IMG/VR virus record: IMGVR_UViG_3300017917_001342
Coordinates: 186,001 to 250,000 of that record
Direction: 5' to 3' (one strand)
DNA length: 64,000 nt
In this document: one piece after another, positions 7,888-35,437 of the stretch
How the letters are laid out: the number at the start of each line of letters is the position of its first letter
Numbering within the stretch: position 1 is the stretch's first letter
Notes under the pieces: generated by a model
Told to the model about the DNA's origin: nothing
Seen by the model: only the letters and a program-made list of their open reading frames with translations
The model's database searches: none
Made by a program: the position numbers and the translations under genes

Positions 7888-7925
7888 TTCAGCGCATAAT
7901 TTACATTATCCTGGATATTTACACT

Positions 7926-12960: not shown

Positions 12961-13410
12961 ATGCGCTTGTCTGAAATGCTCACATTTGATCAAGACACTA
13001 TAGACCATTTTGCAGAGATACTAGAAAAAGGTGAACCCTGGGCTATACAAACGATCTACGACGAATTAGAAGAATATGGTATACCCGACGGTGAGGAAGC
13101 TGTATTGTTTAGAGAACTGCTACCTGAGATAGTTGCCTGGTTTAATAACGCAATAACTCATGAGGCTCTTGCATATTCTGTAATAGATTACGCAATATTT
13201 CTAATACAGAACGAAAATCTTACAGCATTAATACCATTTGTCGTTAGAAGTTTAAAAGCAAATAAAACCGCAGTAATTAAACATCTGTTAACATTGATAA
13301 AAACCAATCACGAAGGTGCATTAGCAAGAGATTTGTTCAATGATCTATCAAAGTTTAACCTAAATTGGCCTGAATTAGCTGTAATTAAAAAAAGTTTAGA
13401 AGCGTTTTAA
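12961..13410 (+). CDS. Single WPEL-module protein
   Basis: MRLSEML leader; ends NLNWPELAVIKKSLEAF. Confidence 0.8.
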   Translation: MRLSEMLTFDQDTIDHFAEILEKGEPWAIQTIYDELEEYGIPDGEEAVLFRELLPEIVAWFNNAITHEALAYSVIDYAIFLIQNENLTALIPFVVRSLKANKTAVIKHLLTLIKTNHEGALARDLFNDLSKFNLNWPELAVIKKSLEAF

Positions 13411-14142
13411 ATGAGCGATAGCCCCTATACAGTTGTTAGTAAATCGTTTGATGAATTAAATGCTGCAAGTGAAGAAGCGCAGATTGCAGCAGTTAAAGCC
13501 AGACCAAATCTAATAACAAAAATTGATAATCCCAGTGCAGCAGTGCAATGGGCAGCAATTGAAGCTCACGCAATTGTTGCCAGATACTTAGAGCATCTCG
13601 ATGAGCGTGTACAACGAAAACTGATAGAAATAGATTATCGTAATCTACGTTACATAAACAATCCATCGCCTAGTATACAGTTAGCAGCAGTAACAGAAGA
13701 TCCTAAAAGTATTCAGTATATTACCAATCCAACTCCAGAAGCACAGGTTGTAGCAACTAAAAAATGGCCCGAGGCTATACGATACATCAGTAGTCCAACC
13801 GAAGATGCGCAGGTAAATGCAGTTCTTGGTCATCCGTGGTCTATAGAACACATTGCTGAGCCTTGTGTGCAAGCACAAAAAATTGCAATATATAGTCAAC
13901 CAGGTACAATGTTTGACTTGCAATGGCAGTTAGATCCTAATATCTTCAAAGAAGATGTAATCAAAACCGCCATTATTCGCACGATATTAACATCGTTAAA
14001 AAAGGACGGTAATACATATCAGGCAAGAAGATTTATCAATTTTTTAAAATCTTTTGATGTACAATGGCCTGAACTCGCAGTTATAGAACGTAGCATAGGC
14101 AACGAACCAGATGATGAATATGACGAAGGAATTCAACTATGA
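13411..14142 (+). CDS. Short helical-repeat protein (~23-aa repeats) plus C-terminal WPEL module
   Basis: About 6 repeats of P[ST]xxxQxxAVxxxPxxIxYIxN; ends VQWPELAVIERSIG. Confidence 0.8.
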   Translation: MSDSPYTVVSKSFDELNAASEEAQIAAVKARPNLITKIDNPSAAVQWAAIEAHAIVARYLEHLDERVQRKLIEIDYRNLRYINNPSPSIQLAAVTEDPKSIQYITNPTPEAQVVATKKWPEAIRYISSPTEDAQVNAVLGHPWSIEHIAEPCVQAQKIAIYSQPGTMFDLQWQLDPNIFKEDVIKTAIIRTILTSLKKDGNTYQARRFINFLKSFDVQWPELAVIERSIGNEPDDEYDEGIQL

Positions 14143-14888
14143 AAGCCAATGAATTCATTAACGAATCTATCAAATGGCAAGGCAACTCAGGTGCTACTCA
14201 AGCACGCCAAACTGATCATACTATTGAGGAAGCACGACGTTACGTTAAAGAAAACTATCCTCGAAATAAAACCTATACTATCAGCAGACTTGAACCAGGG
14301 TTTAGAGCATTGGATGCCAAAACCGGCTCTACTAATCCCAGTGCAGCAAATGCTACACTAAATCAAGAAGCAGCACTGAACCAGTTTGTTGAAATCTTTA
14401 AACTAAAACAAAATCCCTACATGAGCGGCAGCGAGCAAGTAACTGGCAGTATAGGATTCAGTTGGCATGTAGGTGAAGATAAAGAGCGCAAGCATGCCAT
14501 CTTCTATTATGAAGATCGCGGCATGGGCAATGACAGTATCACCATTGCTGCAAAAACCATTGTTGAACTCAAAGTAATGCAAGAAGTTCTTATTCATACA
14601 GGTCTTATCCCTGATCCTGATGAGGCCAAAGCAAAACGCACCGCTGACGCAGATAAACGTAGAGATGTACTTGCTAAAAAAGGCATTAAAATTGGTACTC
14701 GCATTACTGCTCGTAGACTAGACAACGGCGAAGTGTGGTTTGCTGGCAACGTAACTAGCATTGCACAAAACGGCTCTGTGGGTATTACTATTGATCAAGT
14801 AGATCCTGCTGTACAAGGTGTTACAGTTGGCAGTGTGTATAAAATGAAGCCAGGTAGTATTAGCAAAGACATGATCTCCAATGACTGA
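14139..14888 (+). CDS. Hypothetical putative internal virion protein
   Basis: Leader MKANEFINE/S closely resembles the T4 capsid-targeting sequence; beta-rich SH3/KOW-like C-terminus. Confidence 0.75.
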   Translation: MKANEFINESIKWQGNSGATQARQTDHTIEEARRYVKENYPRNKTYTISRLEPGFRALDAKTGSTNPSAANATLNQEAALNQFVEIFKLKQNPYMSGSEQVTGSIGFSWHVGEDKERKHAIFYYEDRGMGNDSITIAAKTIVELKVMQEVLIHTGLIPDPDEAKAKRTADADKRRDVLAKKGIKIGTRITARRLDNGEVWFAGNVTSIAQNGSVGITIDQVDPAVQGVTVGSVYKMKPGSISKDMISND

Positions 14889-14898
14889 TTATTTTCAA

Positions 14899-14913
14899 TA
14901 AATATCATAGGAG
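14899..14913 (+). promoter_or_regulatory. Late-type promoter TAAATA plus RBS
   Basis: ATAAATAT (core 14899-14904), AGGAG at 14909-14913. Confidence 0.7.
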
Positions 14914-14920
14914 ATTTATT

Positions 14921-15367
14921 ATGCGATTAGCAGATTTGTACGGCGACTTGTTTGAGTCTATCACAGCAGATGATATTAAAGATCCTATTTCCAAGGGACT
15001 AGTTCCTAATTTCATCCACAGTATGCCGTCTACTCATCTGCTAACAGGTATGGATCAATACTATCAATATTATAGATTCTTGATTGCCATTGCAGGTTAC
15101 CCGGAAGATTCCGACATACCATTAACTAGTGTTGTTAGGGATTGGCCTATGACAGTAGCATACACTACACAAGAAAAAGAAATGATAGATAAAGTTGCCA
15201 AACGTATGGGTATATCACCTACAGAAATTGCGTACGAAGGCAGTAAAGAATTACCCGATACCTACACTGTAAGTCCGGTAATGAAATTTTCAATGACTGA
15301 ATCTCAACACCGCAAATTAAAAAATCTAGCAGTTCTAACAGAGGCAATGATAAATGAAACTAAATGA
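14921..15367 (+). CDS. Hypothetical protein, paralogous to the N-terminal domain of the next gene
   Basis: Shared YRF, (A/G)YTxxE and VSPVMxFxM(T/S)E motifs with 15354..15752. Confidence 0.8.
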   Translation: MRLADLYGDLFESITADDIKDPISKGLVPNFIHSMPSTHLLTGMDQYYQYYRFLIAIAGYPEDSDIPLTSVVRDWPMTVAYTTQEKEMIDKVAKRMGISPTEIAYEGSKELPDTYTVSPVMKFSMTESQHRKLKNLAVLTEAMINETK

Positions 15368-17153
15368 TCTGTTTGAACAGTTTGGATCCACAAAACTTGC
15401 ACAAAATGCAGAAGCAGTAATACCACCTGTTGCGATATTCCCAGATCTTGACAACAGCAACAGTTACCTGCAATATAGATTCACAACTAATATGGCTGCG
15501 GCACGAGCGATTGCCGCCGGTGATGTACCATTTAAAAAAATTGTACCGTGGGAACAGTATCTAACTGTGGTAGGCTATACCCCAGAAGAAATAGAAACTG
15601 TGCGTCTAGCAGCAGAGCAATCTGGTATGAGAATGGAAATGCTTAACACTACCCCTAGCCACGAGCCAGATTGGGTTAACAAAGTTAGCCCGGTGATGCC
15701 GTTTCATATGAGCGAAACTAAGCGTAAAACCAAAGGCAAAGGTTTGTTTGAAAGCGATGGCAAACAGGTACTGGTAGTATATCCAGGACGTTTTCAGCCG
15801 GTACACCGAGGCCACGGTGCAGTGTTTAATGCACTACAAGAAGAGTTTGGTGGCAATGTGTTTATGGCAACGTCTGATAAAATAGAACCAGATCGCAGTC
15901 CATTCAGCTATGCAGATAAATCACTAATGGCTCGTGCTGCTGGTATACCTAGCGATAAATTTGTCAAGGTTAAAAATCCCTACAGTCCAATTGAAATTAC
16001 CAAACTCTACGATCCCAACAACACAGTGCTGATACTAGTTGTTGGTGCTAAAGACATGGTGGATGATCCTAGATTTAAATTTGGTAACAAAAAAGACGGA
16101 TCACCTAGTTACCTACAAAAATTTAAAGATATTGCTGTAGCTGAGCCTATGAGTAAACACGGCTATATTATGGAAGCACCCACTGTGGAATTTCTTGTAT
16201 TAGGACATCCCGTTACAAGTGCTACACAGGTACGTAATCTCTATGCTAAAAGTGATAACGTAAAACGAGATAGAATACTTAAAGATCTCTTTGAACAAAA
16301 CCGTGTAGAACTGAGACAACTGTTTGACAGTAAATTTGGTTCTGTGCAGGAAACTATCAGTGAATCTTTACACAGCGACCAAATTGTAGACCACATGCGC
16401 AATTTCTTAAAAATTGCACAACGTGAATTGCAATTAGCACAATTGCCTAAAATTATTTGGACTAGTTCAAGTACTGCTCATGGTGAGCGACCAACATTCG
16501 GGAAATTCCAAAATGACAACAACACTATTACAGTTAGCATTGTTAACAGGCATCCTATTGACATCATGCGTACACTTGCGCATGAACTCACGCATTACAA
16601 GCAAGATATCACAAAGGGTCTAAACGCCAACAGTGGTGATACTGGCAGTCCAGAAGAAGATGAGGCCAATGCTATGGCAGGCCGTATTATGCGGCATTTT
16701 GATGAAAAATACCCGCATGCATTTAACGCTAAACCGGTAGTATCAGAACAAATTAAACGTAGAAGTAAAACTACTAATGAAACTGATACAACTACACCAC
16801 AAACTAAAATGAATCCTGCAGATATAGAAGCAGACATGCTTGCTAATACAAGTGGTATGCCAGCGGATCCAAATGCTGCTAAAAACCTAGCGAAAAAGCT
16901 CGGTATTAAGCTGCTTGGTAAAATGGCAGGGAAAGCTATTGCTGGACCTGTAGGTGGTGTTGTAGGTGGTGTAATAGCAGGCGAAATTGCAGACCGCGCT
17001 CTTGTTAAAGAAGAAGTCTGGGATAAACCAAATCCTGTTAAAAAACATAAAAAGCTAGATGCTGACGATAAGGCTGCTGCAAAACGCAGAGCCAAAGCTG
17101 CTGGTAGAAAATACCCAAACATGGTTGACAACATCTGGGCTGCTAGACGATAA
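15354..17153 (+). CDS. Multidomain protein: unknown domain + HxGH nucleotidyltransferase + zincin metallopeptidase + Gly-zipper + basic peptide
   Basis: YPGRFQPVHRGH...SATQVR; RTLAHELTHYKQ...EDEANAMAG; GPVGGVVGGVIAG. Confidence 0.85.
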   Translation: MKLNDLFEQFGSTKLAQNAEAVIPPVAIFPDLDNSNSYLQYRFTTNMAAARAIAAGDVPFKKIVPWEQYLTVVGYTPEEIETVRLAAEQSGMRMEMLNTTPSHEPDWVNKVSPVMPFHMSETKRKTKGKGLFESDGKQVLVVYPGRFQPVHRGHGAVFNALQEEFGGNVFMATSDKIEPDRSPFSYADKSLMARAAGIPSDKFVKVKNPYSPIEITKLYDPNNTVLILVVGAKDMVDDPRFKFGNKKDGSPSYLQKFKDIAVAEPMSKHGYIMEAPTVEFLVLGHPVTSATQVRNLYAKSDNVKRDRILKDLFEQNRVELRQLFDSKFGSVQETISESLHSDQIVDHMRNFLKIAQRELQLAQLPKIIWTSSSTAHGERPTFGKFQNDNNTITVSIVNRHPIDIMRTLAHELTHYKQDITKGLNANSGDTGSPEEDEANAMAGRIMRHFDEKYPHAFNAKPVVSEQIKRRSKTTNETDTTTPQTKMNPADIEADMLANTSGMPADPNAAKNLAKKLGIKLLGKMAGKAIAGPVGGVVGGVIAGEIADRALVKEEVWDKPNPVKKHKKLDADDKAAAKRRAKAAGRKYPNMVDNIWAARR

Positions 17154-17184
17154 TTAATGCTGCAACTGCACAACGGAGGTTGTA

Positions 17185-17355
17185 GTGACATTATCAGCTA
17201 GTGACAGAGAAACACTTGGACGTATATTGTTCGAAACTGTGTGTCCAAGTAGAAATTGGCTAGATGTGTTACCAATGGAACGTAGACAGTGGGTGGCAGG
17301 CGCTGTTAAAATATATACTTTTGATTTAGATCAAATACGGCACGGCAGATACTAG
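17185..17355 (+). CDS. Small hypothetical protein, 56 aa (GTG start, not in the ORF track)
   Basis: GGAGGT RBS, then MTLSASDRETLGRILFE...RHGRY*; fills the intergenic gap. Confidence 0.55.
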   Translation: MTLSASDRETLGRILFETVCPSRNWLDVLPMERRQWVAGAVKIYTFDLDQIRHGRY

Positions 17356-17366
17356 TTGTTTTAAAC

Positions 17367-17372
17367 TAAATA
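17367..17372 (+). promoter_or_regulatory. Late-type promoter TAAATA, 5 nt from the ATG
   Basis: CTAAATATCTGCATG. Confidence 0.7.
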
Positions 17373-17377
17373 TCTGC

Positions 17378-19693
17378 ATGAAAATTAGCAGTATATTCAA
17401 AAACACAACTATATTAACTGATGGCAGGTCGTGGCGTCGTGACCCTGACGACGACATGTATAGTCGCGACAAAACATCAAAATACAAAATCAAAGATATT
17501 GTAGATGAACCGCCAGAAGAATTGGAAATCTCAGATGAAGAAAACTTCAAAGGGAAAGACCGAATAATTAAAATTCCTCATCTGAATTGTATATTTCTCA
17601 TTACTGCACATTGGCAATATAGACAATCACTTAGACATGGCAATTTAGACATTGCCATTGAAAAGCTATCAAACTTATTTGAACGTAACTACGACGTGAT
17701 ATCTAAACTTCCATATGGGTCGGAGTTTGGATTAATAGATCAAAAGAATTACAAAACTGTTTTTACCAAGCGTAGATCTAAAAACGGTACTACTGTATAT
17801 GCAACGAAAACCCTGCTTTCGCCTGAGATGAACCTAAGACCGTCGCAGTATTTTTTTAGAGAATCGTCTGACAACAGTGTGTTCTTAAAAGACCTTGTAA
17901 AAATGTCAGTTGGTATGCCGGACGCTGATTTTTGGATAAGACGCAGTGGCCAATTAAAAAGTCTCGGTGAACCTAGCAAACAATTTGACCCTGACAAAAT
18001 AGGTATCAAAGTTACTGCTACCAATATTATAGATCCAAACTATCTCTATTATGTGTTTATGAATTTGCAAAACCAGGGCGTGTTTGCGCAAATGGCAACA
18101 GGATCAACTGGTTTACAACACATTAAAATCAGCAGTCTTGCAAAAATACCGTTTGCACTAAGTGAATCGCTAAATGAAAACGACGATGAACCTATACGTA
18201 TTAGACTGCGTGGTAATGAAGATACTGCAAAGCGTTGGATCAAAAGCGTATACGATCAATTCCCAGCAAATCCGTTAAATGATCGTCAACACGTTATGCA
18301 ATTTGGCGACGATGCATACGTAGTGTTTGAATTAACACCAAGTTTTAACCGCAGAGGTGCCGTAGAAGTCAAGTGGATAAGCGCACACCCACAACGCAAA
18401 GGTCTCGGTTCTAAAGCACTGAAAACGTTGCAAGATTTAGCGCAAAAGAACAATGTTATGCTTACTCTTTACCCATGGGAAAAAGGTGAGATTAGCCAAC
18501 ATGATCTCAAGCGTTATTATAAAAAGCATGGGTTCAGAGGCGAAGGCGGCGGTAGTGATTACATGAAGTGGGATCCGCTGAACGAAAAAGACTACGACGA
18601 TATAGACGACGATGATAACCGCACACCTGACATAGAAGGTGCTAAGAAATATGTACAGGCTGTAAAACGAGATTTTGATCAGTTTGGTGAGTTGCCAATT
18701 ACTGGCATAATGAATGATTTAGAATATCGCTATAACTTAGATCCATCAACGGTTGATCAAGTTCTACAGCCTGTTAAAGACGACATTGTAATCTACATAA
18801 ACACTGAATTTGGAAAAGGTGAATACAGTATATACGGTGCAGTGCGTCGTCTAGATAAACTGTACAGATCAGGTATCAGTTGGCACGAACTGTATCGCAT
18901 GTTAGATAATCACAAGCACAGTATTATAAAATACATGCTCAGTCAGATTAAAAAAGGTGCAACTGGTATGGTAATGGAAATGACTATCATACTCAAACGT
19001 ATGGGACTTGACTGGCCAGAACTTACTGCAATACAACGCAGTTTGCGTGCAGATAAGCAAGCATTGCCAGAATCATATTCAAAAGAACAACGTATTGAGT
19101 TTGCACAAAAAGCATTTGAGCGAGGTACTGTATACGGTTTTTGGCGATTAGATCTGCTTGATTTAAAAGCTAGCGAAGTACCAGGCGCTATAGAAATACT
19201 TAACGCTGATAAAGACCGTTTTATTAGTGCATTATTACGCATGGTTAAAGACGGTAGCTTTTCTGCTGTGAAATATGCATTAAAAAATTATAGACATCAC
19301 GGGCTGGATTGGCCAGAACTTGATGTTATAGAACGCAGTGTTAAACAGATATCTGAATCCGACAGTTATGATGATCTGCGTAAACGCAACATGGACAAAG
19401 TGCTTAAATCGTTTAAGCTTGGTGCGTGGAACGGCTTCAAAAATCTAGATTTTTTTAATATGAAAGCTGCTGAAGTTCCAGGTGCAGTAGAAGCGTTAGA
19501 ACAGTTTAAAGAACAATTTGTTAAGATGCTGTTAACTCGCATGAAGAGTGGTGACTATGGTGATATAGGTACTGCTAGAAACCTAGCTGCTCAGATGCAA
19601 GGTGTTGGTATGAGTTGGCCGGAATTAGACATTGTTATAAAAAGTGCTAACAAAGCGTTTGATGATTATGATAAAAGTTTAGGCAACGACTGA
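17378..19693 (+). CDS. Multidomain protein: possible RNase-like domain + HsdS-type TRD + GNAT + three WPEL-terminated modules
   Basis: ITAHWQYRQSLR; IDPNYLYYVF...ATGSTGLQHIKISSLAKIPF; QRKGLGSKAL...RYYKKHGF; WPEL x3. Confidence 0.8.
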   Translation: MKISSIFKNTTILTDGRSWRRDPDDDMYSRDKTSKYKIKDIVDEPPEELEISDEENFKGKDRIIKIPHLNCIFLITAHWQYRQSLRHGNLDIAIEKLSNLFERNYDVISKLPYGSEFGLIDQKNYKTVFTKRRSKNGTTVYATKTLLSPEMNLRPSQYFFRESSDNSVFLKDLVKMSVGMPDADFWIRRSGQLKSLGEPSKQFDPDKIGIKVTATNIIDPNYLYYVFMNLQNQGVFAQMATGSTGLQHIKISSLAKIPFALSESLNENDDEPIRIRLRGNEDTAKRWIKSVYDQFPANPLNDRQHVMQFGDDAYVVFELTPSFNRRGAVEVKWISAHPQRKGLGSKALKTLQDLAQKNNVMLTLYPWEKGEISQHDLKRYYKKHGFRGEGGGSDYMKWDPLNEKDYDDIDDDDNRTPDIEGAKKYVQAVKRDFDQFGELPITGIMNDLEYRYNLDPSTVDQVLQPVKDDIVIYINTEFGKGEYSIYGAVRRLDKLYRSGISWHELYRMLDNHKHSIIKYMLSQIKKGATGMVMEMTIILKRMGLDWPELTAIQRSLRADKQALPESYSKEQRIEFAQKAFERGTVYGFWRLDLLDLKASEVPGAIEILNADKDRFISALLRMVKDGSFSAVKYALKNYRHHGLDWPELDVIERSVKQISESDSYDDLRKRNMDKVLKSFKLGAWNGFKNLDFFNMKAAEVPGAVEALEQFKEQFVKMLLTRMKSGDYGDIGTARNLAAQMQGVGMSWPELDIVIKSANKAFDDYDKSLGND

Positions 19694-19694
19694 C

Positions 19695-21914: not shown

Positions 21915-21945
21915 TTCAATATCAAATATCTAACATGCTTGTGTT

Positions 21946-22788
21946 ATGACAACAGTATTATTCAGCATGCCTTGCCACGAAAGTCACGAGGCTATAAACA
22001 TAAACATTTCAAACCTGCGTCGTTTTAATGGACTGCAACATCCAGTTGTTATTCATGCAGATTCTGGATGGAACGAATTTGATCCAGAACGTGTAGATTT
22101 TTCCGATATCTACGTCAATCCAAGACGTTATAGAACACAACATGCACATAGTCAGATTACTACTCACATCAGTAACTACTTGACAGCAGTAGAACAAGGT
22201 GTCGAGTTTGATTACGTTGCAGTATTTCACACTAGCGAAATGTTTGTAAAACGTGGTATGCATGATCATATAGCACGATACGATTATGGTCTTTGGTTTA
22301 CACCAGACACCCAGCCTAAAGATTTTGGTTGGCCTCCTCTACGTAACGCTATAGAAATGAATATGTTTAAGGATCTGTTTCCTGCAAATGCAGTAGACAA
22401 CTATCTAGGTAATCTGCTAGAAGGCAGTTGGTGGAGCAGAGATCTTTTCAAAGAAATAGTAGATTGGACACTTTACCACTATGATCTCGAAGATCTTCGT
22501 TTACCATGGGCAGCAGAAGAATGTTTCTTTCCTACTCTTAGCTGGCATCTAAGCGGAGGTAAACGATTTACACATCCCTATTGCGCATTTCATCATCAAG
22601 ATCACTATGTACAAGATCGTACACTGATAGACAACATACGTGCAGGTAGAGATATCACCTGCTGGCAACCTCAGAATTTTGTCTACGATTGGAAACCTAT
22701 TTCTAGCGAAGGTTTTTATTCTGTTAAGCGTATCAGCAGAGACTTAGACGATCCAATTAGACATTATATAAGTTGGCTAAAGACATGA
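21946..22788 (+). CDS. Possible glycosyltransferase-like protein
   Basis: GT-A-like start (VLFSMPCHE...VVIHAD), FDYV, AEECFFPT. The ORF is solid but the function is weakly supported. Confidence 0.5.
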   Translation: MTTVLFSMPCHESHEAININISNLRRFNGLQHPVVIHADSGWNEFDPERVDFSDIYVNPRRYRTQHAHSQITTHISNYLTAVEQGVEFDYVAVFHTSEMFVKRGMHDHIARYDYGLWFTPDTQPKDFGWPPLRNAIEMNMFKDLFPANAVDNYLGNLLEGSWWSRDLFKEIVDWTLYHYDLEDLRLPWAAEECFFPTLSWHLSGGKRFTHPYCAFHHQDHYVQDRTLIDNIRAGRDITCWQPQNFVYDWKPISSEGFYSVKRISRDLDDPIRHYISWLKT

Positions 22789-22836
22789 TGTAATATTTGT
22801 TAAATATAGTTGAGAATTCACTCGACTGTTTTTTAA

Positions 22837-22842
22837 TAAATA
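22837..22842 (+). promoter_or_regulatory. Late-type promoter TAAATA, 5 nt from the ATG (second copy at 22801-22806)
   Basis: ATAAATATCATCATG. Confidence 0.7.
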
Positions 22843-22847
22843 TCATC

Positions 22848-23756: not shown

Positions 23757-23759
23757 ACA

Positions 23760-24788: not shown

Positions 24789-24795
24789 ACAACGA

Positions 24796-24801
24796 TAAAT
24801 A
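24796..24801 (+). promoter_or_regulatory. Late-type promoter TAAATA
   Basis: ATAAATAT in the intergenic gap before 24831. Confidence 0.65.
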
Positions 24802-24830
24802 TCCCTATAACAGCACGGGTATTTTTCTAA

Positions 24831-26198: not shown

Positions 26199-26199
26199 T

Positions 26200-28059: not shown

Positions 28060-29227
28060 AAACGCAGATGAATTAATTGCTGATCGTATGGACGGTTTAA
28101 AAAAGCAAGAACCTCTAGCACTTAGAGGATTAATCCATAATCTAAAGAGCAGACCCTATGAATGGTACGATGATGATATTGCTGCACTGTTAGAAGAATA
28201 CAAAGCTGACATATTAAAATACATCACACGCAAATATCATGTGGGCCAGATATCATTACCAACTAATGATATTAAAAAGCTAATGAGTGTTGGAATACAA
28301 TGGCCTGAATTAACTGATCTTGTCAACCGATACAAAACAGCTATTATCAAAAATGTACTAGAAACTCTTAAGCTAGATTACAGAAACGTAGCTGACACTG
28401 TAGGTACGTTGACTAGTATGAATCTCGGTTGGAAAGAATTAGACGCAATTAATCGTAGCTTAAATGCACTGCGTAATAATGTAAACGAAGCTTTAAAGTA
28501 TGATAACAATGAAATAGAAGAACTCAAAACTAACATAATTCAAGACCTACATGACGGATATTATAGAGATGCGTTAGATGTCATAGCAACACTGTGGCAT
28601 GACAATAGTAATCTTGGCGACGTAACTGCTATAACACGTTTATTGGAAAAACATAAACGTGGGTTGATTACACAGTTATTAACTGTAATCAAATATAGTA
28701 GCACTTACGAATTAAGCAAATATTTTAAAGATTTTATTAAAGGACTACAAGATTTTGGGATTGATTGGCCAGAATTCGACGCTATGTTAAAATCGATCAA
28801 CGCTGACAAAACAACACTTGATGAATCTTATTCAAAAAACGATGCAGAACAGTATAAGGATGAAATCATTAATACCATTAAGAAGGATGATATGGATGAT
28901 TTGTTTGAAATGCTTGCTGAGTTTGCATGGATACCGAGAGCACTTGTAGGCGATGTTACAAAACTAAATCGTATACTAGAACTACACAAAGTTCGAGTAA
29001 TAAAAGCATTACTGTCTTATATGCGAGAGCTAGATGACAGCGGTATTTGCTACATCATGCCACAAATTCTAGGCGGTTTAGAACATGCTGGCATAAATTG
29101 GCCCGAGTTAAAAATTATAGATCAAAGTGTTGACAAAATACAAAAACGTCGCGAAGCCGAAGATGACGATTTGTATGAGAGTAGCAAAGCAGTAAATACT
29201 ACTGCAAAAAAGGCTCGCAGACGATGA
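28046..29227 (+). CDS. WPEL-module repeat protein
   Basis: WPEL, WKEL, WPEF, WPEL; junctions VNE/A, LDE/S, LYE/S. Confidence 0.85.
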   Translation: MTSSKNADELIADRMDGLKKQEPLALRGLIHNLKSRPYEWYDDDIAALLEEYKADILKYITRKYHVGQISLPTNDIKKLMSVGIQWPELTDLVNRYKTAIIKNVLETLKLDYRNVADTVGTLTSMNLGWKELDAINRSLNALRNNVNEALKYDNNEIEELKTNIIQDLHDGYYRDALDVIATLWHDNSNLGDVTAITRLLEKHKRGLITQLLTVIKYSSTYELSKYFKDFIKGLQDFGIDWPEFDAMLKSINADKTTLDESYSKNDAEQYKDEIINTIKKDDMDDLFEMLAEFAWIPRALVGDVTKLNRILELHKVRVIKALLSYMRELDDSGICYIMPQILGGLEHAGINWPELKIIDQSVDKIQKRREAEDDDLYESSKAVNTTAKKARRR

Positions 29228-31533
29228 CACCTCATGAAATTCGCGTAACTCTAAATTTCTTCTTAGAAGATCTACAAGAAGAACGTTACATTGATGCTGT
29301 CAATGGTCTGATAGAATTGTATGCCTATACCAATTCTGATTATCCTCCATATGCTGATCGTAAAAACCAAATACCCTTTGACAAAATCAGCGAATTACTA
29401 CAACAGCATAAAACTGGTATTGTAAAACGCTTGTTGCGTTACATGAAGCATTATGATGCAGATGAAGTAAAACGATTTGTGTTGCTTGCTATCAATGCAT
29501 TAAAACACTTTGGTATAGATTGGCCTGAACTAGCTGTTATGAAAAACAGCGTTTCGCCGGAAGTTGAAGAATCCTGGAGCAACAAATATAAGAAAAGCAT
29601 CAATTGCAGCAATCCAAAAGGTTTTAGTCAACGTGCGCACTGTGCTGCTAGACGTAAGCGCAAAGCTGGCGGTAAGACTAAGAGCAAGCCAGTGAGAGAA
29701 GCATTGAGTTCGCCGCTGGGAGGTATTGTGCTGTCAATGCAAGACGCATTGCGAAAAGGCAGTGATGCCGCAGTATCGCATCGTGTTATTGACCTTTGGC
29801 GTGCTAACACAGCAGAACGACAGCGTGCAAGCGATATGCTAGCAGATGTAGAACACTTGGTAACAAGTTATGTAGAACGTCATCTCGGTTCAGAAAATCA
29901 TTTAGATGTACAAGACGGCTTGAACATGCTTCAAGTTTTACCACCAAGTGAAGATTGGGCAGACTTGCAAGTGTTATTAAACAAATACAAAACCAACATA
30001 CTAAAGTATTTGTTAAAGTGCATGAAGGATAATGATATAGATATACCTCATTATCGAATACCTGTGTTGAAAAAATGGGGCACAGATTGGCCAGAACTGG
30101 ACACAATCTACACCAGTGCTGATTCAGAATTGAAAAAACAAAAACGTATAGACGAGGGTGTTATTGCCTATCATGCTAGCCCGGTTGCTACAATTCGCAG
30201 CAAACGTTTTTGGCCATTTACACATTTTGGCAGTGAAAAAGCCGCAGCAGATCGTATCAAATATCTAAAGAAAACAGGCGAACTTGCAAAGGACTCGCCA
30301 GTCAGAGTCTATCAAGTTGAACTCAATATCAACAATCCCGCTGTAATCAAAGATGAACCTGTGCAACACAGTGCAACACAGTTTGCATTTGCATTGAAAA
30401 AGGCCAAGCTGATTTCTCAAGAGGAAATGGAAAGCATCACAAAACTTGGACACGATCCTGTTACCTATAAGCCTACTATGAGTTACGCTGATGCTGAAAA
30501 GCAACGCAATCGTAAATTGAGAGCATTGATGCGTAGCAAAGGCTTTGACGGATTTGCGTATGTGAATCGCTTTGAAGACAAAGGCAGTATGAGCTATGTC
30601 ATACTGGATCCCGCACAAGCTAGAACATTGCGACCAGTTAAAGCAGCGCCCGCAGAATTAAAAGAAGATGAACGCAACAATTTTTCCACAGTGTTTAGAA
30701 ATCGTTCTGAACAAGAAGGTGGTCACCGTTTTACACTCAATGCAGATGAATATGTAGAACATATAGAAAAACTCTTAAAATATGGAATGCTAGCAACTGA
30801 TAATGTAGTGATAGAATTAGCTACGCTGGGTCGACGCAGGCCCGATGCAATTAAAAATTGGCCAGAACTAGCTAACTTATTAAATCAACACAAAGATGAG
30901 TTGATGCGCATTATACAACATCACTTTAATAAAGACGTTACCAGTGAGCATGCAATGGCTCGCAGTGTTGATGTTGCAGGTGCATTAAAGCTAATTGGTA
31001 TAGACTGGCCAGAAATCGCTCAGCTTATTGAAAAGAACAAGCACAAAATAGTCAAAACACTGCTTGAGTTTATGCGAGATGAATATGACGCCCATATCCC
31101 ATACGAACTTAAAACACTGCGTAGCTATGGTGCAGATTGGCCAGAGTTAGCAGTAATTGAAAAAAGCCTAAACGCAGGATTGAATGAATCAAAGTCTAAC
31201 AAATTACCGCAGGACGTTACTGACATGGTAATGGACATGCTTAAACGAGATGGCACAGGCATCGCACTGTATCATATTTGGGAATGGAAATTAGACATAG
31301 ATAAACTGCCAGAATTAGAAGAATTCCTAAACGACCGCAAGCAAACCTATATGGAAATTATGTTGAAAAACATGAAGATGGGCGGAGACGCACTATACGG
31401 TACAGAACAGTATTTAGAACGTTTAGAAGGTACTAAAATAAATTGGCCTGAACTCAAAGTCATACGTAATAGCTTAAATAAGCTATTAGCAGAATTGCAT
31501 GCGTCGGAAGAACATCCAAATGAAAACCATTGA
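29224..31533 (+). CDS. Multidomain protein: WPEL modules + basic Cys peptide + ADP-ribosyltransferase (ART-PolyVal-like)
   Basis: AYHAS...THFG...VYQVELNINNP...KGFDGFAYVNRFED...SYVILDPAQ; six WPE[LI]; TAAATA at 29193-29198 upstream. Confidence 0.85.
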   Translation: MTPHEIRVTLNFFLEDLQEERYIDAVNGLIELYAYTNSDYPPYADRKNQIPFDKISELLQQHKTGIVKRLLRYMKHYDADEVKRFVLLAINALKHFGIDWPELAVMKNSVSPEVEESWSNKYKKSINCSNPKGFSQRAHCAARRKRKAGGKTKSKPVREALSSPLGGIVLSMQDALRKGSDAAVSHRVIDLWRANTAERQRASDMLADVEHLVTSYVERHLGSENHLDVQDGLNMLQVLPPSEDWADLQVLLNKYKTNILKYLLKCMKDNDIDIPHYRIPVLKKWGTDWPELDTIYTSADSELKKQKRIDEGVIAYHASPVATIRSKRFWPFTHFGSEKAAADRIKYLKKTGELAKDSPVRVYQVELNINNPAVIKDEPVQHSATQFAFALKKAKLISQEEMESITKLGHDPVTYKPTMSYADAEKQRNRKLRALMRSKGFDGFAYVNRFEDKGSMSYVILDPAQARTLRPVKAAPAELKEDERNNFSTVFRNRSEQEGGHRFTLNADEYVEHIEKLLKYGMLATDNVVIELATLGRRRPDAIKNWPELANLLNQHKDELMRIIQHHFNKDVTSEHAMARSVDVAGALKLIGIDWPEIAQLIEKNKHKIVKTLLEFMRDEYDAHIPYELKTLRSYGADWPELAVIEKSLNAGLNESKSNKLPQDVTDMVMDMLKRDGTGIALYHIWEWKLDIDKLPELEEFLNDRKQTYMEIMLKNMKMGGDALYGTEQYLERLEGTKINWPELKVIRNSLNKLLAELHASEEHPNENH

Positions 31534-34171
31534 TTTAAACATATTTTTAGAAGCTCAAGGTCCTGCAAAGATACCAACTGGTTCTGGTAAGTCCACTATT
31601 GCAAACCCTGCGCATTCTCCCGGTAGCTATTACGAAGGTGATCCTGCTAACTTTGATTTTGGTGCACAGCGTAGAAACTACCAAGCATTAAATGCCGCAT
31701 TGGCACGTAACGGTAAAAAGCTTAATTACATCGGTGTTTCCAAAGCAGATAGTGGTAGAGACACCTTTGTTGCAACTGCACCCGGTGTTGTATGGTACAA
31801 ATACGAAGGCAGCAATCCACAGTCTGGACAAAACATACTCTACATCAACGGTGTTAAAGACAAGTTTACGTCATTTATGGCATTGTCGCCAGAGGAACAA
31901 GACAAGAAACTGTCTGCAAGTCCTGCTGCATTGAGTTTACAAAAAGGTGATGTGTTTGGTTATATCAATGCACTGGCTGCGTCAGATGCGCCTGCAAACA
32001 CTGTTGTTGACAGTTTGAATCAAAACAAAGATTTGATACTGCAACGAATAGCAAACGAACTGTTAAACTACCCAAAATACATATCTAAGATAAAAACCTT
32101 TAATAAAGCATTGGCTAACAAAGGTGCGTTGCTACCATGGTTAACAGTTGACGAAATTTTAAAAGCAATCCAGCCTGTGATATCGAAAGATCTGTTCGAC
32201 TATTTTTTAAGGTGGCCAAGTACAGATTCATTGAAACGTATCAAATCTGCAATCGCAGTTGGATTGCTGTTTGACATGTCTTATATGCAAGAATTGACCA
32301 ATAACAATGTTGATGGGTTTGTCGAACGCTTTTCTAGTCCCGGCATGTTTACCGGACCAGGATATCGCATGGTAGACAACCTAATAGAATTTCTAACTCT
32401 TGTACGCTACAGTAACCCACGATTAGAAGTTAAGAATCTAATTGACAATGTGGATTATAAGCGCATTGTAAAATATTTAAACGATTCTAGCAATGTAACA
32501 GGAAATGTATATCAAGCTGCTAAACTGTTGTTAAATGCAGGATTTCCAAAAGATCGCATTGTACAGGCATTTGAAGATCTAAAAGAAGAAATGGTTGGCA
32601 ATGCACTGCTTAAATTAGTTAGAACTGCTAGAGTTGATGATATTGGAAATCTCAATGCAGCACTTAATATACTTGGTATATCATGGCCCGAAATTGTTGG
32701 GGATAATATACGTAAGCTGATTGAAAATAACAAAACTAATATTATTAAAACTATACTTACTAATGTAAAAAATGGAGTTTTTCAAAATGCGTTAAATGCT
32801 GTCGATTTCTTTATAGATAACGACTACAAATGGCCAGAGCTAGCTGCAATAAAACGAAGCTTAATCGCTTCACTAAATAACCGAACAGACGAAACACGCA
32901 ACAGTTTGAGTAACAATATGAAAATCGACGAAGTTGAACAATTAGACGAGGACCTTGGTAATCTAAATCAGCTAGGTATGGGTCCGCTGCTTAATGTACT
33001 CAAACAGGAGCATTGGAGTCGCCGAAATTACGATCCAGAGATACGTCCGGTCGGCAAGCGTTTTGTTGGATCGGGCTATGACCGACGAGTAGGTCCTAAC
33101 AGCGAAATACAAGACATTGGTGCAGTAAAAGACATTCTTAAATCTCTACGTAAAGCATTTAAAACCACAGCAGCCGTTGCATTTGCACTATATATAGGCG
33201 GCAAACCTGTGATGTTTGGTGTCACAGATGAATATACACTAGCAGGCAGCAGTCGTCATGGTAAAATTGCCTACGATCTAACACCCTGGGCAGAAACTGT
33301 TAAGCTGTATGATCAGCAACAAAAAGGTCGCTACGCACCTAGTACACAGTTGACAACTATGCGTGACAAAGAAGAACGCAATTACAGTGATCCACGCGAC
33401 AAATGGGATACTCCTGTAATGGTTACTCAAAAATACGCAGGTGATATGATATCAACTGGCGACTTGTCAACTATTGCAAAAGTAATTGAATTTATTTCTG
33501 CTAACACAGGCGAACCTATCACAGCTAAGTTAGTAATGAAAGACGAAGCTGGCTTTGAAAAAATGAAAAGCCGACAGATCAATCATGTTGCAGTTCGCAG
33601 TGCAGCAGAAGATCTCAAGCATAGACTAAGTGTTTACAAGAACAGCAAAAAACCATCTGTAGATACTATTGAAGATTTTATTGCTATGAGCCTTAGAAAA
33701 CCAGGCAGTGTAGTTCAGTTTGCAGGTGTACCATATCGTTTAACTGCAACCAGCTACGATAAAATAGAACCAGTATCTTTGCTATCAGGTAAAGAGTTTA
33801 GCACAGATTATAAAAGCAATCTCAAGGACGATTATCATAACAGTGTTAGGATCTATTACAGATACGACAAAGACACTAATCAATTGTTGCCGATATATGC
33901 CGAATGGTATGACAAAACTGATCCAAATAACCCATCATATCAACGAGTATCTGCTGTTCTAGATGGCAAAGGTTATATCAAAAGTAGACTAAAAGTGCAG
34001 TCGCTAACAAAAGAAGCGGTGATACCAAAAATATTAGAGAAGATTAAATCGTCGCAATTCAAAGATGCATTGTTATATGTTCAGGCATTGCAAAAAATGG
34101 GTATGGACTGGCCAGAGTTAAGTGTTATTGAACGCAGTGCAAATGCTGAATTAAACAAGCCGAGAGACTGA
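31520..34171 (+). CDS. Large WPEL-module protein, apparently a fusion of two genes
   Basis: Start moved to MKTIDLNIFLE/A; internal TAAATA (32874) and in-frame MKIDEVEQLDE/D at 32918; both halves end in WPEL. Confidence 0.8.
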   Translation: MKTIDLNIFLEAQGPAKIPTGSGKSTIANPAHSPGSYYEGDPANFDFGAQRRNYQALNAALARNGKKLNYIGVSKADSGRDTFVATAPGVVWYKYEGSNPQSGQNILYINGVKDKFTSFMALSPEEQDKKLSASPAALSLQKGDVFGYINALAASDAPANTVVDSLNQNKDLILQRIANELLNYPKYISKIKTFNKALANKGALLPWLTVDEILKAIQPVISKDLFDYFLRWPSTDSLKRIKSAIAVGLLFDMSYMQELTNNNVDGFVERFSSPGMFTGPGYRMVDNLIEFLTLVRYSNPRLEVKNLIDNVDYKRIVKYLNDSSNVTGNVYQAAKLLLNAGFPKDRIVQAFEDLKEEMVGNALLKLVRTARVDDIGNLNAALNILGISWPEIVGDNIRKLIENNKTNIIKTILTNVKNGVFQNALNAVDFFIDNDYKWPELAAIKRSLIASLNNRTDETRNSLSNNMKIDEVEQLDEDLGNLNQLGMGPLLNVLKQEHWSRRNYDPEIRPVGKRFVGSGYDRRVGPNSEIQDIGAVKDILKSLRKAFKTTAAVAFALYIGGKPVMFGVTDEYTLAGSSRHGKIAYDLTPWAETVKLYDQQQKGRYAPSTQLTTMRDKEERNYSDPRDKWDTPVMVTQKYAGDMISTGDLSTIAKVIEFISANTGEPITAKLVMKDEAGFEKMKSRQINHVAVRSAAEDLKHRLSVYKNSKKPSVDTIEDFIAMSLRKPGSVVQFAGVPYRLTATSYDKIEPVSLLSGKEFSTDYKSNLKDDYHNSVRIYYRYDKDTNQLLPIYAEWYDKTDPNNPSYQRVSAVLDGKGYIKSRLKVQSLTKEAVIPKILEKIKSSQFKDALLYVQALQKMGMDWPELSVIERSANAELNKPRD

Positions 34172-34174
34172 TCT

Positions 34175-35437
34175 ATGAAGATTACAGAGTTATCAGAGGC
34201 TGTAGAATTACCGCCAGATGTTATAGAACAACTTAACGGTTTATTAATTAAACCATTGCGTGATACTCTGATAAGACGTATGGCATATCCAAATCTCTAT
34301 TACATAATTGATACATTTGAAGATATGCTTGCTGATAAAAAATATGCCAAGTCGCCGCGTCGTAAACAGGCAATTGCGTTGCTATTTCCATATGTTTTGC
34401 AAGCATTAGATGAGATTATCAAAAATGCCAAAGCAGACGGTAGCTATTATCCTTTCACTAGAATAGTCAAGCTACTGAGATACAGCATAGACAACGAAGC
34501 TGTTGCAGAAGTTTTAGAAAACAACAAAGGCAAACTCTTACAGATATTAAAAGCCTTTATTGACAAAACTCACAAATCTGCACATAACGTTGGACGAAAT
34601 GCCGACGAGAGTGCAATTGTAGATATTGTCAATGCTCTTGATCATGCAGGCATTGATTGGATAGAACTCAAAGACCTATATAAACAACATTTCTATAATC
34701 GCTATAGCGGCTGGTTAAGTCAATCGCAAGACAAATGGGGTACAAATACTGTATTCAATGTGTTAAACGACATGAGTAGGCACAAACTCACTATAGATGA
34801 TCTCAACGAAGAACTAGCGAACCGTTTACAGTCTATGAAATCAACAATATTAAACAGATCACTGTTTAATTTTAGACATGATTCTGTGCGATACGGTTTG
34901 GTAGAAATGGGAGACTACTATAAAAAACTGCGACGTCTTGGGTTCGATTGGCCTGAATTACAAATATCTAGCTTAGATCAATTCAAAACACCTATCATGC
35001 GTGAGTTACTGACACTGTTTAAAGAACAAAACGTAGGCCGCGCAGCAAAAATAGTAGCAGAATTAAAGCAGGCAACAGATTGGCCAGAACTAGCTGCTAT
35101 GGAACGATCACTAGGTGCTAAACAACTTGATGAAGAACTGCACCCTGCACGTATCAAAGCAGTTGATGAATCTCTGCGCAACGGTGATTATATAGGTGCT
35201 GCACATTATATGGGTGTGTACGGTGTCAACATAGATGAGTTCGACAAGCGTGTTCGTGAACGATTTGAAGAAATGAAACCAGAAATCATTCGTGAAATGC
35301 TACAGCTTGTCAAAAACATTTCGCTCGATCGTGGTTATCGAATAATGGACAATGTTCGTAAAGCTGGACTAGGTTGGCCAGAGATTGATATCATATTCAA
35401 AAGTCTAGACAAGTCCTACACTGAACGATACCGTTAA
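34175..35437 (+). CDS. WPEL-module repeat protein
   Basis: Leader MKITELSE/A; WIEL, WPEL, WPEL, WPEI; LDE/E junction. Confidence 0.85.
   Translation: MKITELSEAVELPPDVIEQLNGLLIKPLRDTLIRRMAYPNLYYIIDTFEDMLADKKYAKSPRRKQAIALLFPYVLQALDEIIKNAKADGSYYPFTRIVKLLRYSIDNEAVAEVLENNKGKLLQILKAFIDKTHKSAHNVGRNADESAIVDIVNALDHAGIDWIELKDLYKQHFYNRYSGWLSQSQDKWGTNTVFNVLNDMSRHKLTIDDLNEELANRLQSMKSTILNRSLFNFRHDSVRYGLVEMGDYYKKLRRLGFDWPELQISSLDQFKTPIMRELLTLFKEQNVGRAAKIVAELKQATDWPELAAMERSLGAKQLDEELHPARIKAVDESLRNGDYIGAAHYMGVYGVNIDEFDKRVRERFEEMKPEIIREMLQLVKNISLDRGYRIMDNVRKAGLGWPEIDIIFKSLDKSYTERYR

What the first reader, a model, noticed from the sequence alone, without database searches (positions are those of the whole stretch)
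12961..35437. Massively expanded WPEL module that caps the C-terminus of predicted mature products
Seen: 32 WPE[LIFV] copies in 11 ORFs, each ending a ~50-aa helical unit, in two flavours. Internal copies run straight into the next unit (WPELxxLLNx[YH]K). Terminal copies read WPELxxIx[RK]S and are followed, typically within 5-20 aa, by a stop or an [ILV]-x-E site (ISE/S, IDE/N, LME/A, IDE/A, LDE/N, LDE/S, LDE/G, VEE/S, IDE/G, LNE/S, LDE/E). The sequence upstream of each module is highly variable. Four ORFs lacking the N-terminal leader (13411, 26200, 28046, 29224) still carry it. Inference: a constant C-terminal tag for packaging, ejection or docking on a shared host or phage target, attached to a diversified library of helical binders. 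I cannot assign it to a known family.
Basis: partly seen in the sequence, partly recalled or inferred. Interest (0 to 1): 0.88.

Follow-up and report, generated by a model that had tools for sequence, protein, structure and literature searches.

The report
Giant-phage head-cargo polyproteins, new helical domain
An uncultured 519-kb giant phage carries a gene cluster whose proteins are strings of a previously undescribed 100-residue helical domain, each followed by what looks like a T4-type head-protease cutting site, so they are most likely chopped into many small proteins inside the capsid.

Summary
There are 32 WPE[LIFV] motifs (36-37 units by profile) in 11 ORFs between 12961 and 35437, and essentially none elsewhere in the window.

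In 168 metagenomic relatives, 88% of 629 'terminal' units are followed by [ILV]-x-E, with the E 12-30 residues after the W. Random anchors give 33%. In C-terminal units the stop codon falls at the same distance.

The unit is the conserved C-terminal part of a compact six-helix domain of about 100 residues (AlphaFold pLDDT 97). It has no Pfam, PHROG, PDB or BFVD relative, and no match in 50,697 deposited phage genomes. Profile search finds 614 unnamed protein clusters.

The predicted sites lie in low-confidence linkers. Their E is invariant among orthologues. The motif is depleted inside domain bodies. Eleven of 16 cluster ORFs begin with a leader resembling the T4 capsid-targeting sequence.

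Best reading: polyproteins packaged into the prohead and diced by a gp21-type protease into acidic helical proteins and enzyme fragments. Whether the module is itself a packaging signal is plausible, because leaderless ORFs keep conserved sites, but it is untested. The protease gene was not recovered from this contig, and no proteomic evidence exists.

The parts
7926..12959 (+). Giant ORF of about 1677 aa. The likely true start carries a T4-CTS-like leader ending in LNE. It has a glycine-zipper/TM-like region, many [ILV]xE sites in polar linkers and no WPEL unit. It is probably a packaged or ejected protein and heads the cluster.
12961..13410 (+). 149-aa ORF with a leader and one WPEL domain. 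The stop lies 14 aa after the W.
13411..14142 (+). 243-aa leaderless ORF. It starts directly after the in-frame TAA of the previous ORF. It has NPS-x-x-VQ-x-AAV type repeats (phrog_5925) and one terminal WPEL unit. The stop is at W+25.
14139..17153 (+). Three leader-bearing ORFs without WPEL units: 14139-14888, 14921-15367 and 15354-17153. The last has a cytidylyltransferase-like domain and an HExxH motif. They are probably cargo of the same system.
17378..19693 (+). 771-aa ORF with a leader-like start, a weak GNAT-like region and four units. Predicted cuts fall after residues 565 and 660. The last segment (19358-19690) was modelled.
19695..21914 (+). 739-aa ORF with a leader (IFE/A) and one WPEF unit with a cut after residue 288. 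A very basic 57-aa peptide follows, then a Pol-beta-type nucleotidyltransferase domain.
22848..23756 (+). 302-aa leader-bearing ORF without a WPEL unit. The true start is at the internal ATG of the 22797 ORF.
23760..24788 (+). 342-aa ORF with a leader and four units (two internal, two terminal). A cut is predicted after IDE-174. The tail is acidic.
24831..26198 (+). 455-aa ORF with a leader (LME/A) and three units. A cut is predicted after LME-165. The stop is at W+15.
26200..28059 (+). 619-aa leaderless ORF made of five domains. Predicted cuts fall after E111 (26530-26532), E223 (26866-26868), E400 (27397-27399) and E506 (27715-27717).
28046..29227 (+). 393-aa leaderless ORF overlapping the previous stop by 14 nt. 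It has four units and predicted cuts after residues 148, 260 and 378.
29224..31533 (+). 769-aa leaderless ORF (ATGA overlap) with six units. Predicted cuts fall after residues 116, 311, 655 and 757. It also has a basic peptide (117-159) and an unassigned globular region (about 312-480).
31520..34171 (+). 883-aa ORF with a leader (FLE/A) and three units. It contains two large unassigned regions, each ending in a WPEL unit.
34175..35437 (+). 420-aa ORF with a leader and four units. A cut is predicted after LDE-320. The stop is at W+20.
14899..24803 (+). Four copies of TAAATATC (14899, 17367, 22837, 24796), 3-28 nt upstream of the starts of ORFs 14921, 17378, 22848 and 24831. This is a candidate promoter element that would divide the cluster into transcription units.

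Best explanation
Proposal. The cluster (about 7.9-35.4 kb) encodes capsid-internal cargo of an uncultured giant phage of the T4 superfamily. The window is part of a 518,643-bp IMG/VR contig.

Architecture. Eleven ORFs are beads-on-a-string polyproteins. The bead is a new acidic domain of about 100 residues: two paralogue-specific helices, then a conserved three-helix repeat (L-x-x-x-K-x-x-II-K-x-LL ... L-x-x-x-G), then a capping helix that starts with D/N-W-P-E-L. One to three repeats can be stacked, and then the WPEL helix doubles as the first helix of the next repeat (the 'internal flavour').

Processing. After the last repeat the capping helix has its own signature, WPEL-d-[IV]-I-x-[KR]-S. 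Nine to thirteen residues after the S comes [LIV]-x-E followed by a small or polar residue, or the stop codon. This is the specificity of the T4 gp21 prohead protease. Inside the prohead the polyproteins would therefore be diced into fragments of about 11-13 kDa (one repeat) or 17-19 kDa (two repeats), or into larger enzyme-bearing fragments.

Entry. ORFs that open a translationally coupled run carry a T4-type N-terminal capsid-targeting leader. The leaderless ORFs that follow presumably enter through the WPEL domain itself, by associating with the core or with leader-bearing WPEL proteins.

Status of each step. Shown: motif statistics, domain model, site placement in linkers, leaders, family size. 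Inferred: cleavage, packaging, the entry route of leaderless ORFs, and ejection into the host to serve host take-over or counter-defence.
For: Site association. 87.6% against 33%, specific for E at P1 and a hydrophobic residue at P3. P1' is S, A, D, N, G or T. The stop codon sits at the same distance in 134 C-terminal units.

Site placement. In the AlphaFold model of ORF 26200, the low-confidence or non-helical stretches (106-113, 212-228, 396-402, 500-511) coincide with the predicted sites E111, E223, E400 and E506. Those E residues are invariant in 13 orthologues of 45-96% identity, and indels are whole segments bounded by the sites.

Motif avoidance. [ILV]xE[SAGNTD] is depleted inside domain bodies (0.72 of shuffle, z = -4.9), while [ILV]xK, [ILV]xQ and [ILV]xD are enriched.

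Quantised products. Lengths between predicted ends peak at 100-130 and 150-175 aa.

Leaders. Present in 11 of 16 cluster ORFs against 2 of 34 elsewhere (p = 7e-6). They resemble the T4 ipI/ipII/ipIII leaders read from NC_000866.

Literature. T4 CTS propeptides are 10-19 residues; residues 8 and 10 govern processing; Asp at the P1 position blocks cleavage (PMC9026906). T4 Alt is cut at ITE-6 and LTE-619 (PMC5694885). T4 internal proteins are diverse and share only the CTS (PMC3012670).

Lineage. The DNA polymerase is T4-type and closest to Atu_ph07 and Rak2-like jumbo phages. Atu_ph07, K64-1 and pEa_SNUABM_47 encode gp21 homologues.

Other. Enzyme domains sit in the same ORFs. Gene spacing of -14 to +3 nt indicates coupling. 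Purifying selection, dN/dS 0.11.
Against: There is no proteomic or experimental evidence of cleavage, packaging or ejection.

The protease gene of this very contig was not retrieved in three IMG/VR scans. No WPEL unit lies within 8 kb of any retrieved protease.

No cultured phage carries the family, so no virion proteome can be consulted.

Predicted products are acidic (median pI 5.4). T4 internal proteins are basic.

Four ORFs lack a leader, so their packaging requires an unproven second route.

There is no sign of diversifying selection between close strains, which does not favour an arms-race role.
Confidence: 0.55

Rival explanations
1. The WPEL proteins are auxiliary scaffold or core-building proteins of a very large capsid. 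They would co-assemble into the prohead core, be cut into pieces by the prohead protease like T4 gp22, gp67 and gp68, and be expelled before DNA packaging. On this reading they are not delivered to the host.
For: They are acidic, all-helical and multiply cut at predicted [LIV]xE sites, like T4 core proteins (PMC9026906). Many copies of one domain could build a lattice. There is no diversifying selection. The scaffold proteins of related giant phages share a short motif, L-x-x-x-K-x-x-IMKELL.
Against: Related phages already have a gp22-type scaffold gene next to the protease and the major capsid protein. The motif resemblance is not significant (hhalign probability 2%). The cluster lies beside replication genes, not in the head module. 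The same ORFs carry enzyme domains. Orthologues gain and lose whole segments, which is unexpected for a size-determining scaffold. Folded pieces of 11-19 kDa are large for escape through shell pores (inference).
Confidence: 0.15
2. One reading: the WPEL module is a constant C-terminal tag whose job is docking on a shared host or phage target (packaging, ejection or host binding). The variable upstream helices would be a diversified library of binders.
For: The terminal flavour has conserved residues (I+6, K/R+8, S+9) that internal copies do not need for the fold. Large enzyme-bearing fragments also end in a unit. Leaderless ORFs keep conserved sites.
Against: The unit is an integral part of one compact domain, not an appended peptide. 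The conserved residues look structural. The upstream helices are conserved between orthologues and evolve under the same constraint as the unit. Leader-bearing cargo without any unit exists in the same cluster.
Confidence: 0.15
3. The proteins are ordinary cytoplasmic helical-repeat proteins (adaptors or chaperone-like) that never enter the capsid. The [ILV]-x-E would be a linker habit, or the site of another protease, for example the HExxH protein encoded at 15354-17153.
For: No direct evidence of virion association. The cluster sits among replication and metabolism genes. An HExxH motif is present in ORF 15354. A ClpB-like ATPase is nearby.
Against: The motif is Glu-specific with a hydrophobic P3, exactly the T4 gp21 rule, and Asp is not tolerated (PMC9026906). 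The same motif ends T4-like N-terminal leaders in the same ORFs. The motif is avoided inside domain bodies. Pfam finds no peptidase domain in ORF 15354.
Confidence: 0.1

Closest known systems
T4 internal proteins IPI/IPII/IPIII and Alt (capsid-targeting sequence plus gp21 processing)
   Same: A short N-terminal leader of the form M-K-x-x-[polar/acidic]-[hydrophobic]-F/I-x-E, ending in the protease site. Cleavage after [LI]-x-E. Products of about 10-20 kDa. Genes lie outside the head module. Paralogues are diverse. Enzyme cargo (Alt) is cut at both ends.
   Different: The WPEL domain is all-helical and acidic, while the IPs are basic. Several products are encoded per ORF as a polyprotein. The shared element is C-terminal and is a folded domain. 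Some ORFs have no leader. There is no sequence or fold similarity to the IPs.
Inner-body and ejection-protein paralogue families of phiKZ, 201phi2-1 and SPN3US
   Same: Giant phages. Expanded paralogue families packaged in the head. Multiple cuts by a gp21-related prohead protease after Glu.
   Different: Their motif is S/A/G-x-E or A-x-E, which is not enriched here. The phage lineage is unrelated. There is no PHROG or BFVD match. Here the products are regular domain cassettes with a fixed distance from a conserved helix to the cut.
Polyvalent proteins of phages and conjugative elements (Iyer et al. 2017, cited in PMC7824862)
   Same: Long multi-domain proteins combining enzymatic modules (nucleotidyltransferase, GNAT-like), thought to be delivered with the DNA and processed into pieces.
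   Different: No marker domains of that class were detected by Pfam. The dominant module here is a non-enzymatic helical domain. Processing is predicted to use the prohead protease rather than an embedded peptidase.
ARM / HEAT / TPR alpha-solenoid repeats
   Same: A three-helix repeat of about 45 residues that can stack in tandem. The full-length model's best, non-significant Foldseek hits are beta-catenin and importins.
   Different: No Pfam repeat model matches. The single-domain model (pLDDT 97) has no PDB hit better than E = 1, TM 0.42-0.46. Mostly there are only one or two repeats with a dedicated capping helix.
Encapsulin cargo-loading peptides
   Same: A constant C-terminal element shared by otherwise different cargo of an HK97-fold shell. 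This is a functional analogy to the 'tag' idea.
   Different: Those are short unstructured peptides binding the shell interior. Here the element is a folded 100-residue domain, and no binding has been shown.

Membership tests
T4-type capsid-targeted, gp21-processed head proteins | N-terminal propeptide of 10-19 residues resembling the T4 CTS and ending in [LI]-x-E | tested here: met
   11 of 16 cluster ORFs against 2 of 34 elsewhere. Side-by-side with T4 ipI/II/III leaders. Four WPEL ORFs lack it.
T4-type capsid-targeted, gp21-processed head proteins | Sites of the form [LI(V)]-x-E in accessible linkers, with Glu required | tested here: met
   88% against 33%, with no D, Q or K enrichment. Sites lie in low-pLDDT linkers. 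E is invariant in orthologues. The motif is depleted in domain bodies. Actual cleavage is not shown.
T4-type capsid-targeted, gp21-processed head proteins | gp21-family prohead protease encoded by the same genome | tested here: inconclusive
   Present in Atu_ph07, K64-1 and pEa_SNUABM_47 and in more than 560 IMG/VR contigs. The window's contig was not among the loci returned.
T4-type capsid-targeted, gp21-processed head proteins | Physical presence of processed products in virions, and ejection | not testable with these tools
   No cultured phage carries the family.
T4 internal proteins (IPI-III) proper | Small basic DNA-associated proteins homologous to the IPs | tested here: not met
   WPEL segments have mean charge -4.3 and median pI 5.4. 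T4 IPs have +2, +4 and +9. No PHROG hit.
phiKZ-like inner-body / ejection protein families | S/A/G-x-E processing motif and sequence or fold homology | tested here: not met
   [AGS]xE 0.196 against 0.167 control. No PHROG or BFVD match.
ARM/HEAT/TPR alpha-solenoids | Match to repeat profiles or a significant structural superposition | tested here: not met
   Pfam finds none in the 10 cluster proteins scanned (8 of them WPEL ORFs) or in 46 relatives. Foldseek PDB best E = 5e-3 for the full model and E = 1 for the single domain.
gp22-type scaffolding proteins | Gene between protease and major capsid protein, with profile similarity to scaffold proteins of related phages | tested here: not met
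   The cluster lies upstream of the DNA polymerase. hhalign probability 2%.
Polyvalent proteins (Iyer et al. 2017) | One polypeptide combining several effector or enzymatic domains with processing into pieces | tested here: inconclusive
   Pol-beta NTase, a weak GNAT and cytidylyltransferase domains occur in cluster ORFs. No marker domains of the class were detected. Delivery is not testable.

The most novel reading that the evidence does not exclude
The terminal WPEL helix and its fixed 9-13-residue spacer form a second, CTS-independent capsid-targeting and protease-docking signal, a 'ruler' exosite. It would let a giant phage load leaderless multi-cassette polyproteins into the prohead and release a defined library of small acidic proteins for injection. 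This would be a new class of packaging signal and a new way of encoding phage internal proteins.
Probability: 0.2. Interest if true: 0.8.

Novelty: new variant of a known kind. Interest (0 to 1): 0.62.

Why it matters
Internal and ejected head proteins are the least understood part of giant-phage virions. They are a known source of counter-defence factors, such as T4 IPI*.

This finding defines a large protein family (614 clusters at 50% identity) that is unnamed in the sources seen. It has a confident structural model and an explicit, testable processing grammar: leader, domain, terminal helix, spacer, [LIV]-x-E.

If correct, cleavage maps and mature products could be predicted from sequence alone for a clade of uncultured 150-520-kb phages. 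It would also show that T4-style cargo loading has been extended to polyproteins. It points to a folded domain that may act as a second packaging signal, which would be useful for loading foreign proteins into capsids.

Tried and rejected
1. Known-family assignment. Pfam, PHROGs, PDB sequence search with a domain profile, and Foldseek against PDB and BFVD found nothing significant.
2. Cultured-phage relatives. blastn and tblastn of cluster DNA, ORF 26200 and a 16-unit relative against 50,697 phage records gave no match.
3. Scaffold relationship. Weak HMM hits to the ORF downstream of the protease in related phages were not confirmed by profile-profile comparison (probability 2%).
4. Finding the protease of the window's own contig. 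Three IMG/VR scans (a gp21 alignment, a 524-kb-contig protease and the Atu_ph07 protease) did not return this contig. Contig names from a WPEL DNA pattern scan and from DNA-polymerase relatives did not intersect with protease-bearing contigs.
5. Cellular genomes. No relative of the ORF 26200 orthogroup was found. The single DNA-pattern hit, in a Patescibacteria MAG, is a chance 9-residue match with no unit.
6. Diversifying selection. dN/dS is 0.11 in both unit and non-unit parts, so the 'rapidly diversifying library' idea is not supported at this timescale.
7. T4 late promoter TATAAATA. Absent from the window.
8. Synteny with the DNA polymerase. It holds only in the closest relatives, with polymerase identity of 87% or more.
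9. Searching the unit alignment directly in IMG/VR failed for lack of a conserved stretch.
Full report
**Observation.** Only one WPE[LIFVM] occurs anywhere else in six frames of the 64-kb window. The copies align as a unit of about 56 residues with the consensus L-x-x-x-K-x-x-I-x-K-x-x-L-x-x-x-K ... L-x-x-x-G-x-x-W-P-E-L-x-x-I-x-x-S. A profile built from them recovers 36-37 units at i-E < 1e-3. These include degenerate copies (WHEL, WKEL, WPPL, WIEL, SPDL), and all lie in the same 11 ORFs.

Both flavours exist. There are 24 terminal and 8 internal copies in the window. All 17 terminal copies that are not at a protein end are followed by [ILV]-x-E with the E 15-33 residues after the W. For 17 of 17 at a chance rate of 0.33, p is about 8e-9.

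**Context.** The window is part of IMG/VR contig IMGVR_UViG_3300017917_001342, 518,643 bp. A T4-type family-B DNA polymerase lies just downstream (37543-40311). It is closest to Agrobacterium phage Atu_ph07 (48.8% identity), Sinorhizobium phage Phosso, Xanthomonas phage XaC1 and the Rak2-like jumbo phages. A ClpB-like ATPase and a NadR-like gene lie upstream.

The cluster genes are packed with gaps of -14 to +3 nt. Eleven of 16 cluster ORFs start with a short leader of the type M-K/R-hydrophobic-x-D/E-hydrophobic-...-[LIF]-x-E. Elsewhere in the window the figure is 2 of 34 (p = 7e-6). Read from the T4 record, the leaders of ipI, ipII and ipIII have the same build.

According to the literature these 10-19-residue propeptides target proteins into the T4 prohead core. 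They are removed by gp21, residues 8 and 10 determine processing, and Asp in place of the Glu blocks cleavage (PMC9026906). T4 Alt is cut at ITE-6 and LTE-619 (PMC5694885). T4 internal proteins are a diverse set that shares only the targeting sequence (PMC3012670).

**The family outside the window.** No Pfam or PHROG family matches the repeat proteins. Of 46 relatives scanned against Pfam, 44 have no hit and two match only DUF5661. No record among 50,697 deposited phage genomes matches ORF 26200 or a 16-unit relative by tblastn.

A profile search of 1.84 billion representative proteins finds 614 proteins at E <= 1e-3 and 119 at E <= 1e-30. They carry up to 16 units each, and that library holds no names. 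A word-indexed search with ORF 26200 finds 35 metagenomic homologues. None carries a functional name; three are labelled only 'hypothetical protein'. Related loci each carry 22-38 units within about 22 kb. No relative of the ORF 26200 orthogroup was found in 185,579 bacterial and archaeal species genomes.

In 168 proteins with 842 units, 763 are of the terminal type (D/N-W-P-E-L, I at +6 75%, K/R at +8 70%, S at +9 83%). The other 79 are of the internal type, with K at +11 in 81%.

Of 629 terminal units not near a protein end, 87.6% have [ILV]-x-E with the E at W+12 to W+30 (mode 18-22). Random anchors in the same proteins give 33% (binomial 2e-176). [ILV]xD, [ILV]xQ, [ILV]xK and [AGS]xE are not enriched. 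P1' is S, A, D, N, G or T in 84%. For the 134 C-terminal units the stop codon falls at W+12 to W+29 in all but eight (mode 17-20). The genetic end and the predicted proteolytic end of a product therefore coincide.

Inside domain bodies the full motif [ILV]xE[SAGNTD] is depleted to 0.72 of shuffled expectation (z = -4.9). The comparable [ILV]xK, [ILV]xQ and [ILV]xD are enriched, as expected if the motif is selected against where cutting would be harmful. Lengths between consecutive predicted ends are quantised, with peaks at 100-130 and 150-175 residues.

**Structure.** An AlphaFold model of ORF 26200, using 13 orthologues, is all-helical with pTM 0.35, which indicates independent domains. Its low-confidence or non-helical stretches (106-113, 212-228, 396-402, 500-511) coincide with the predicted sites E111, E223, E400 and E506. 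In the orthologue alignment those Glu residues are invariant, and length differences are whole segments bounded by the sites.

A single predicted product (window 19358-19690, 111 aa) was modelled with 23 paralogous segments. It gives pLDDT 96.8 and pTM 0.86, a compact six-helix domain in which W-P-E-L opens the last helix. The two 'variable' N-terminal helices also align between paralogues.

In tandem arrays the WPEL helix of one repeat is the first helix of the next, so the basic repeat is three helices plus a capping helix. The pattern D/N-W-P-E fits a helix N-capping box. Together with the invariant K and L, this suggests that the best-conserved residues are fold determinants (inference from general protein-structure knowledge). 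Foldseek finds nothing significant in PDB or BFVD. The best single-domain hit has E = 1 and TM 0.42. The full model gives only generic solenoids such as beta-catenin at E = 5e-3. A domain profile finds no PDB sequence relative.

**Selection.** Against a 97%-identical relative (L003), dN/dS is 0.11 both in the units and in the rest of the family ORFs. It is 0.03 in neighbouring non-family genes. These are functional genes under purifying selection. They are somewhat less constrained than their neighbours, and there is no diversifying signal. The parts that differ between paralogues are conserved between orthologues.

**Interpretation.** Four lines of evidence point the same way:
- T4-like leaders at the starts of cluster ORFs.
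- Glu-specific [LIV]-x-E sites placed in linkers.
- Avoidance of the motif inside domains.
- A T4-superfamily lineage whose cultured relatives encode gp21 homologues: Atu_ph07 'prohead core protein', 29% identical to T4 gp21 with the GVSSRG block conserved, plus K64-1 and pEa_SNUABM_47.

Together they make processing in the prohead the best explanation. The cluster would then be a set of capsid-internal cargo polyproteins, diced into small acidic helical proteins and enzyme-bearing fragments. The enzyme domains are a Pol-beta nucleotidyltransferase, a weak GNAT and a cytidylyltransferase-like domain. Further candidate sites in polar linkers that are not preceded by a unit would separate enzyme domains and short, very basic peptides.

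The leaderless ORFs (13411, 26200, 28046, 29224) each abut or overlap the preceding WPEL ORF in a run that starts with a leader-bearing ORF. Because their sites are conserved, they presumably reach the protease. The only shared feature that could bring them in is the WPEL domain. The terminal helix also conserves residues (I+6, K/R+8, S+9) that internal copies do not need. A fixed spacing from there to the cut would suit a docking or ruler function.

**Weaknesses.**
- There is no experimental or proteomic evidence.
- The protease gene of this contig was not retrieved.
- WPEL units are not near the head module in any retrieved relative.
- The products are acidic (median pI 5.4), unlike the basic T4 internal proteins. 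This keeps a scaffold or core-building role alive. However, the related phages already have a gp22-like scaffold gene, and the weak motif resemblance to it is not significant.
- Synteny with the polymerase holds only in the closest relatives.

**Novelty.** The kind of system is known: head-internal proteins targeted by a leader and processed by the prohead protease. The new elements are these:
- The domain family itself.
- Its encoding as multi-cassette polyproteins.
- The regular relation between a conserved capping helix and the cut.
- The leaderless members.

I rate it a new variant of a known kind. It is of good interest to phage-assembly and phage-defence specialists, and it is directly testable.

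Noticed in passing
window 14899, 17367, 22837, 24796, 41751 (+) and 52738, 53517 (-): The octamer TAAATATC sits 3-33 nt upstream of start codons in intergenic spots. In three cases (ORFs 17378, 22848 and 53513 on the minus strand) it is exactly 3 nt before the ATG, which would imply leaderless or near-leaderless mRNAs if it is a -10-like promoter element. The T4 late promoter TATAAATA is absent from the window.
   Followed up: partly
window 7833-12959 (likely start 7926): A protein of about 1677 aa with a T4-CTS-like leader, a glycine-zipper/TM-like region (DUF6861, just below the Pfam cut-off), Ala/Pro/Thr-rich linkers and a basic Cys-containing C-terminal domain (phrog_7595). Similar basic tails occur at the end of ORF 15354 (phrog_34011) and inside ORF 29224 (residues 117-159). 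It is possibly a large ejected protein.
   Followed up: partly
L008 21095-21784, L009 12636-13325, L010 18024-18710: Next to the WPEL clusters of three related giant-phage contigs lies a release-factor gene (PCRF/RF-1 domains) split into a 35-aa ORF and a 138-190-aa ORF. This resembles the programmed frameshift arrangement of bacterial prfB.
   Followed up: no
window 13411-14142; also P0002, P0013, P0025: Repeats of the NPS-x-x-VQ-x-AAV type (phrog_5925 and related) occur as cassettes inside the same polyproteins, bounded by the same predicted sites. The polyproteins therefore mix at least two repeat families.
   Followed up: partly
window 12961-13410 / 13411-14142 junction: The two ORFs are in the same frame and separated only by one TAA immediately followed by ATG. 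Read-through was not examined.
   Followed up: no
window 5509-6105 (-) and 52782-53513 (-): Two ORFs outside the cluster also begin with a CTS-like leader ending in [IF]-x-E. They may be further packaged proteins.
   Followed up: no
window 60445-62298 (+): A G+C-richer ORF (617 aa) with strong matches to collagen-like tail-fibre families (phrog_5073, 1e-62).
   Followed up: no
L082 976-2061 and homologues (ORF downstream of the gp21-type protease in related IMG/VR contigs): The scaffold-like protein carries a short motif (L-x-x-x-K-x-x-IMKELL) resembling the first helices of the WPEL unit. Profile-profile comparison is not significant.
   Followed up: yes
L215, L235, L237, L244 (DNA polymerase about 80-82% identical to the window's): In relatives with polymerase identity of about 80-82%, the region upstream of the polymerase holds only one WPEL unit. 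In most of the more distant relatives it holds none. The cluster's position, or its presence, changes quickly within the clade. What replaces it was not examined.
   Followed up: no
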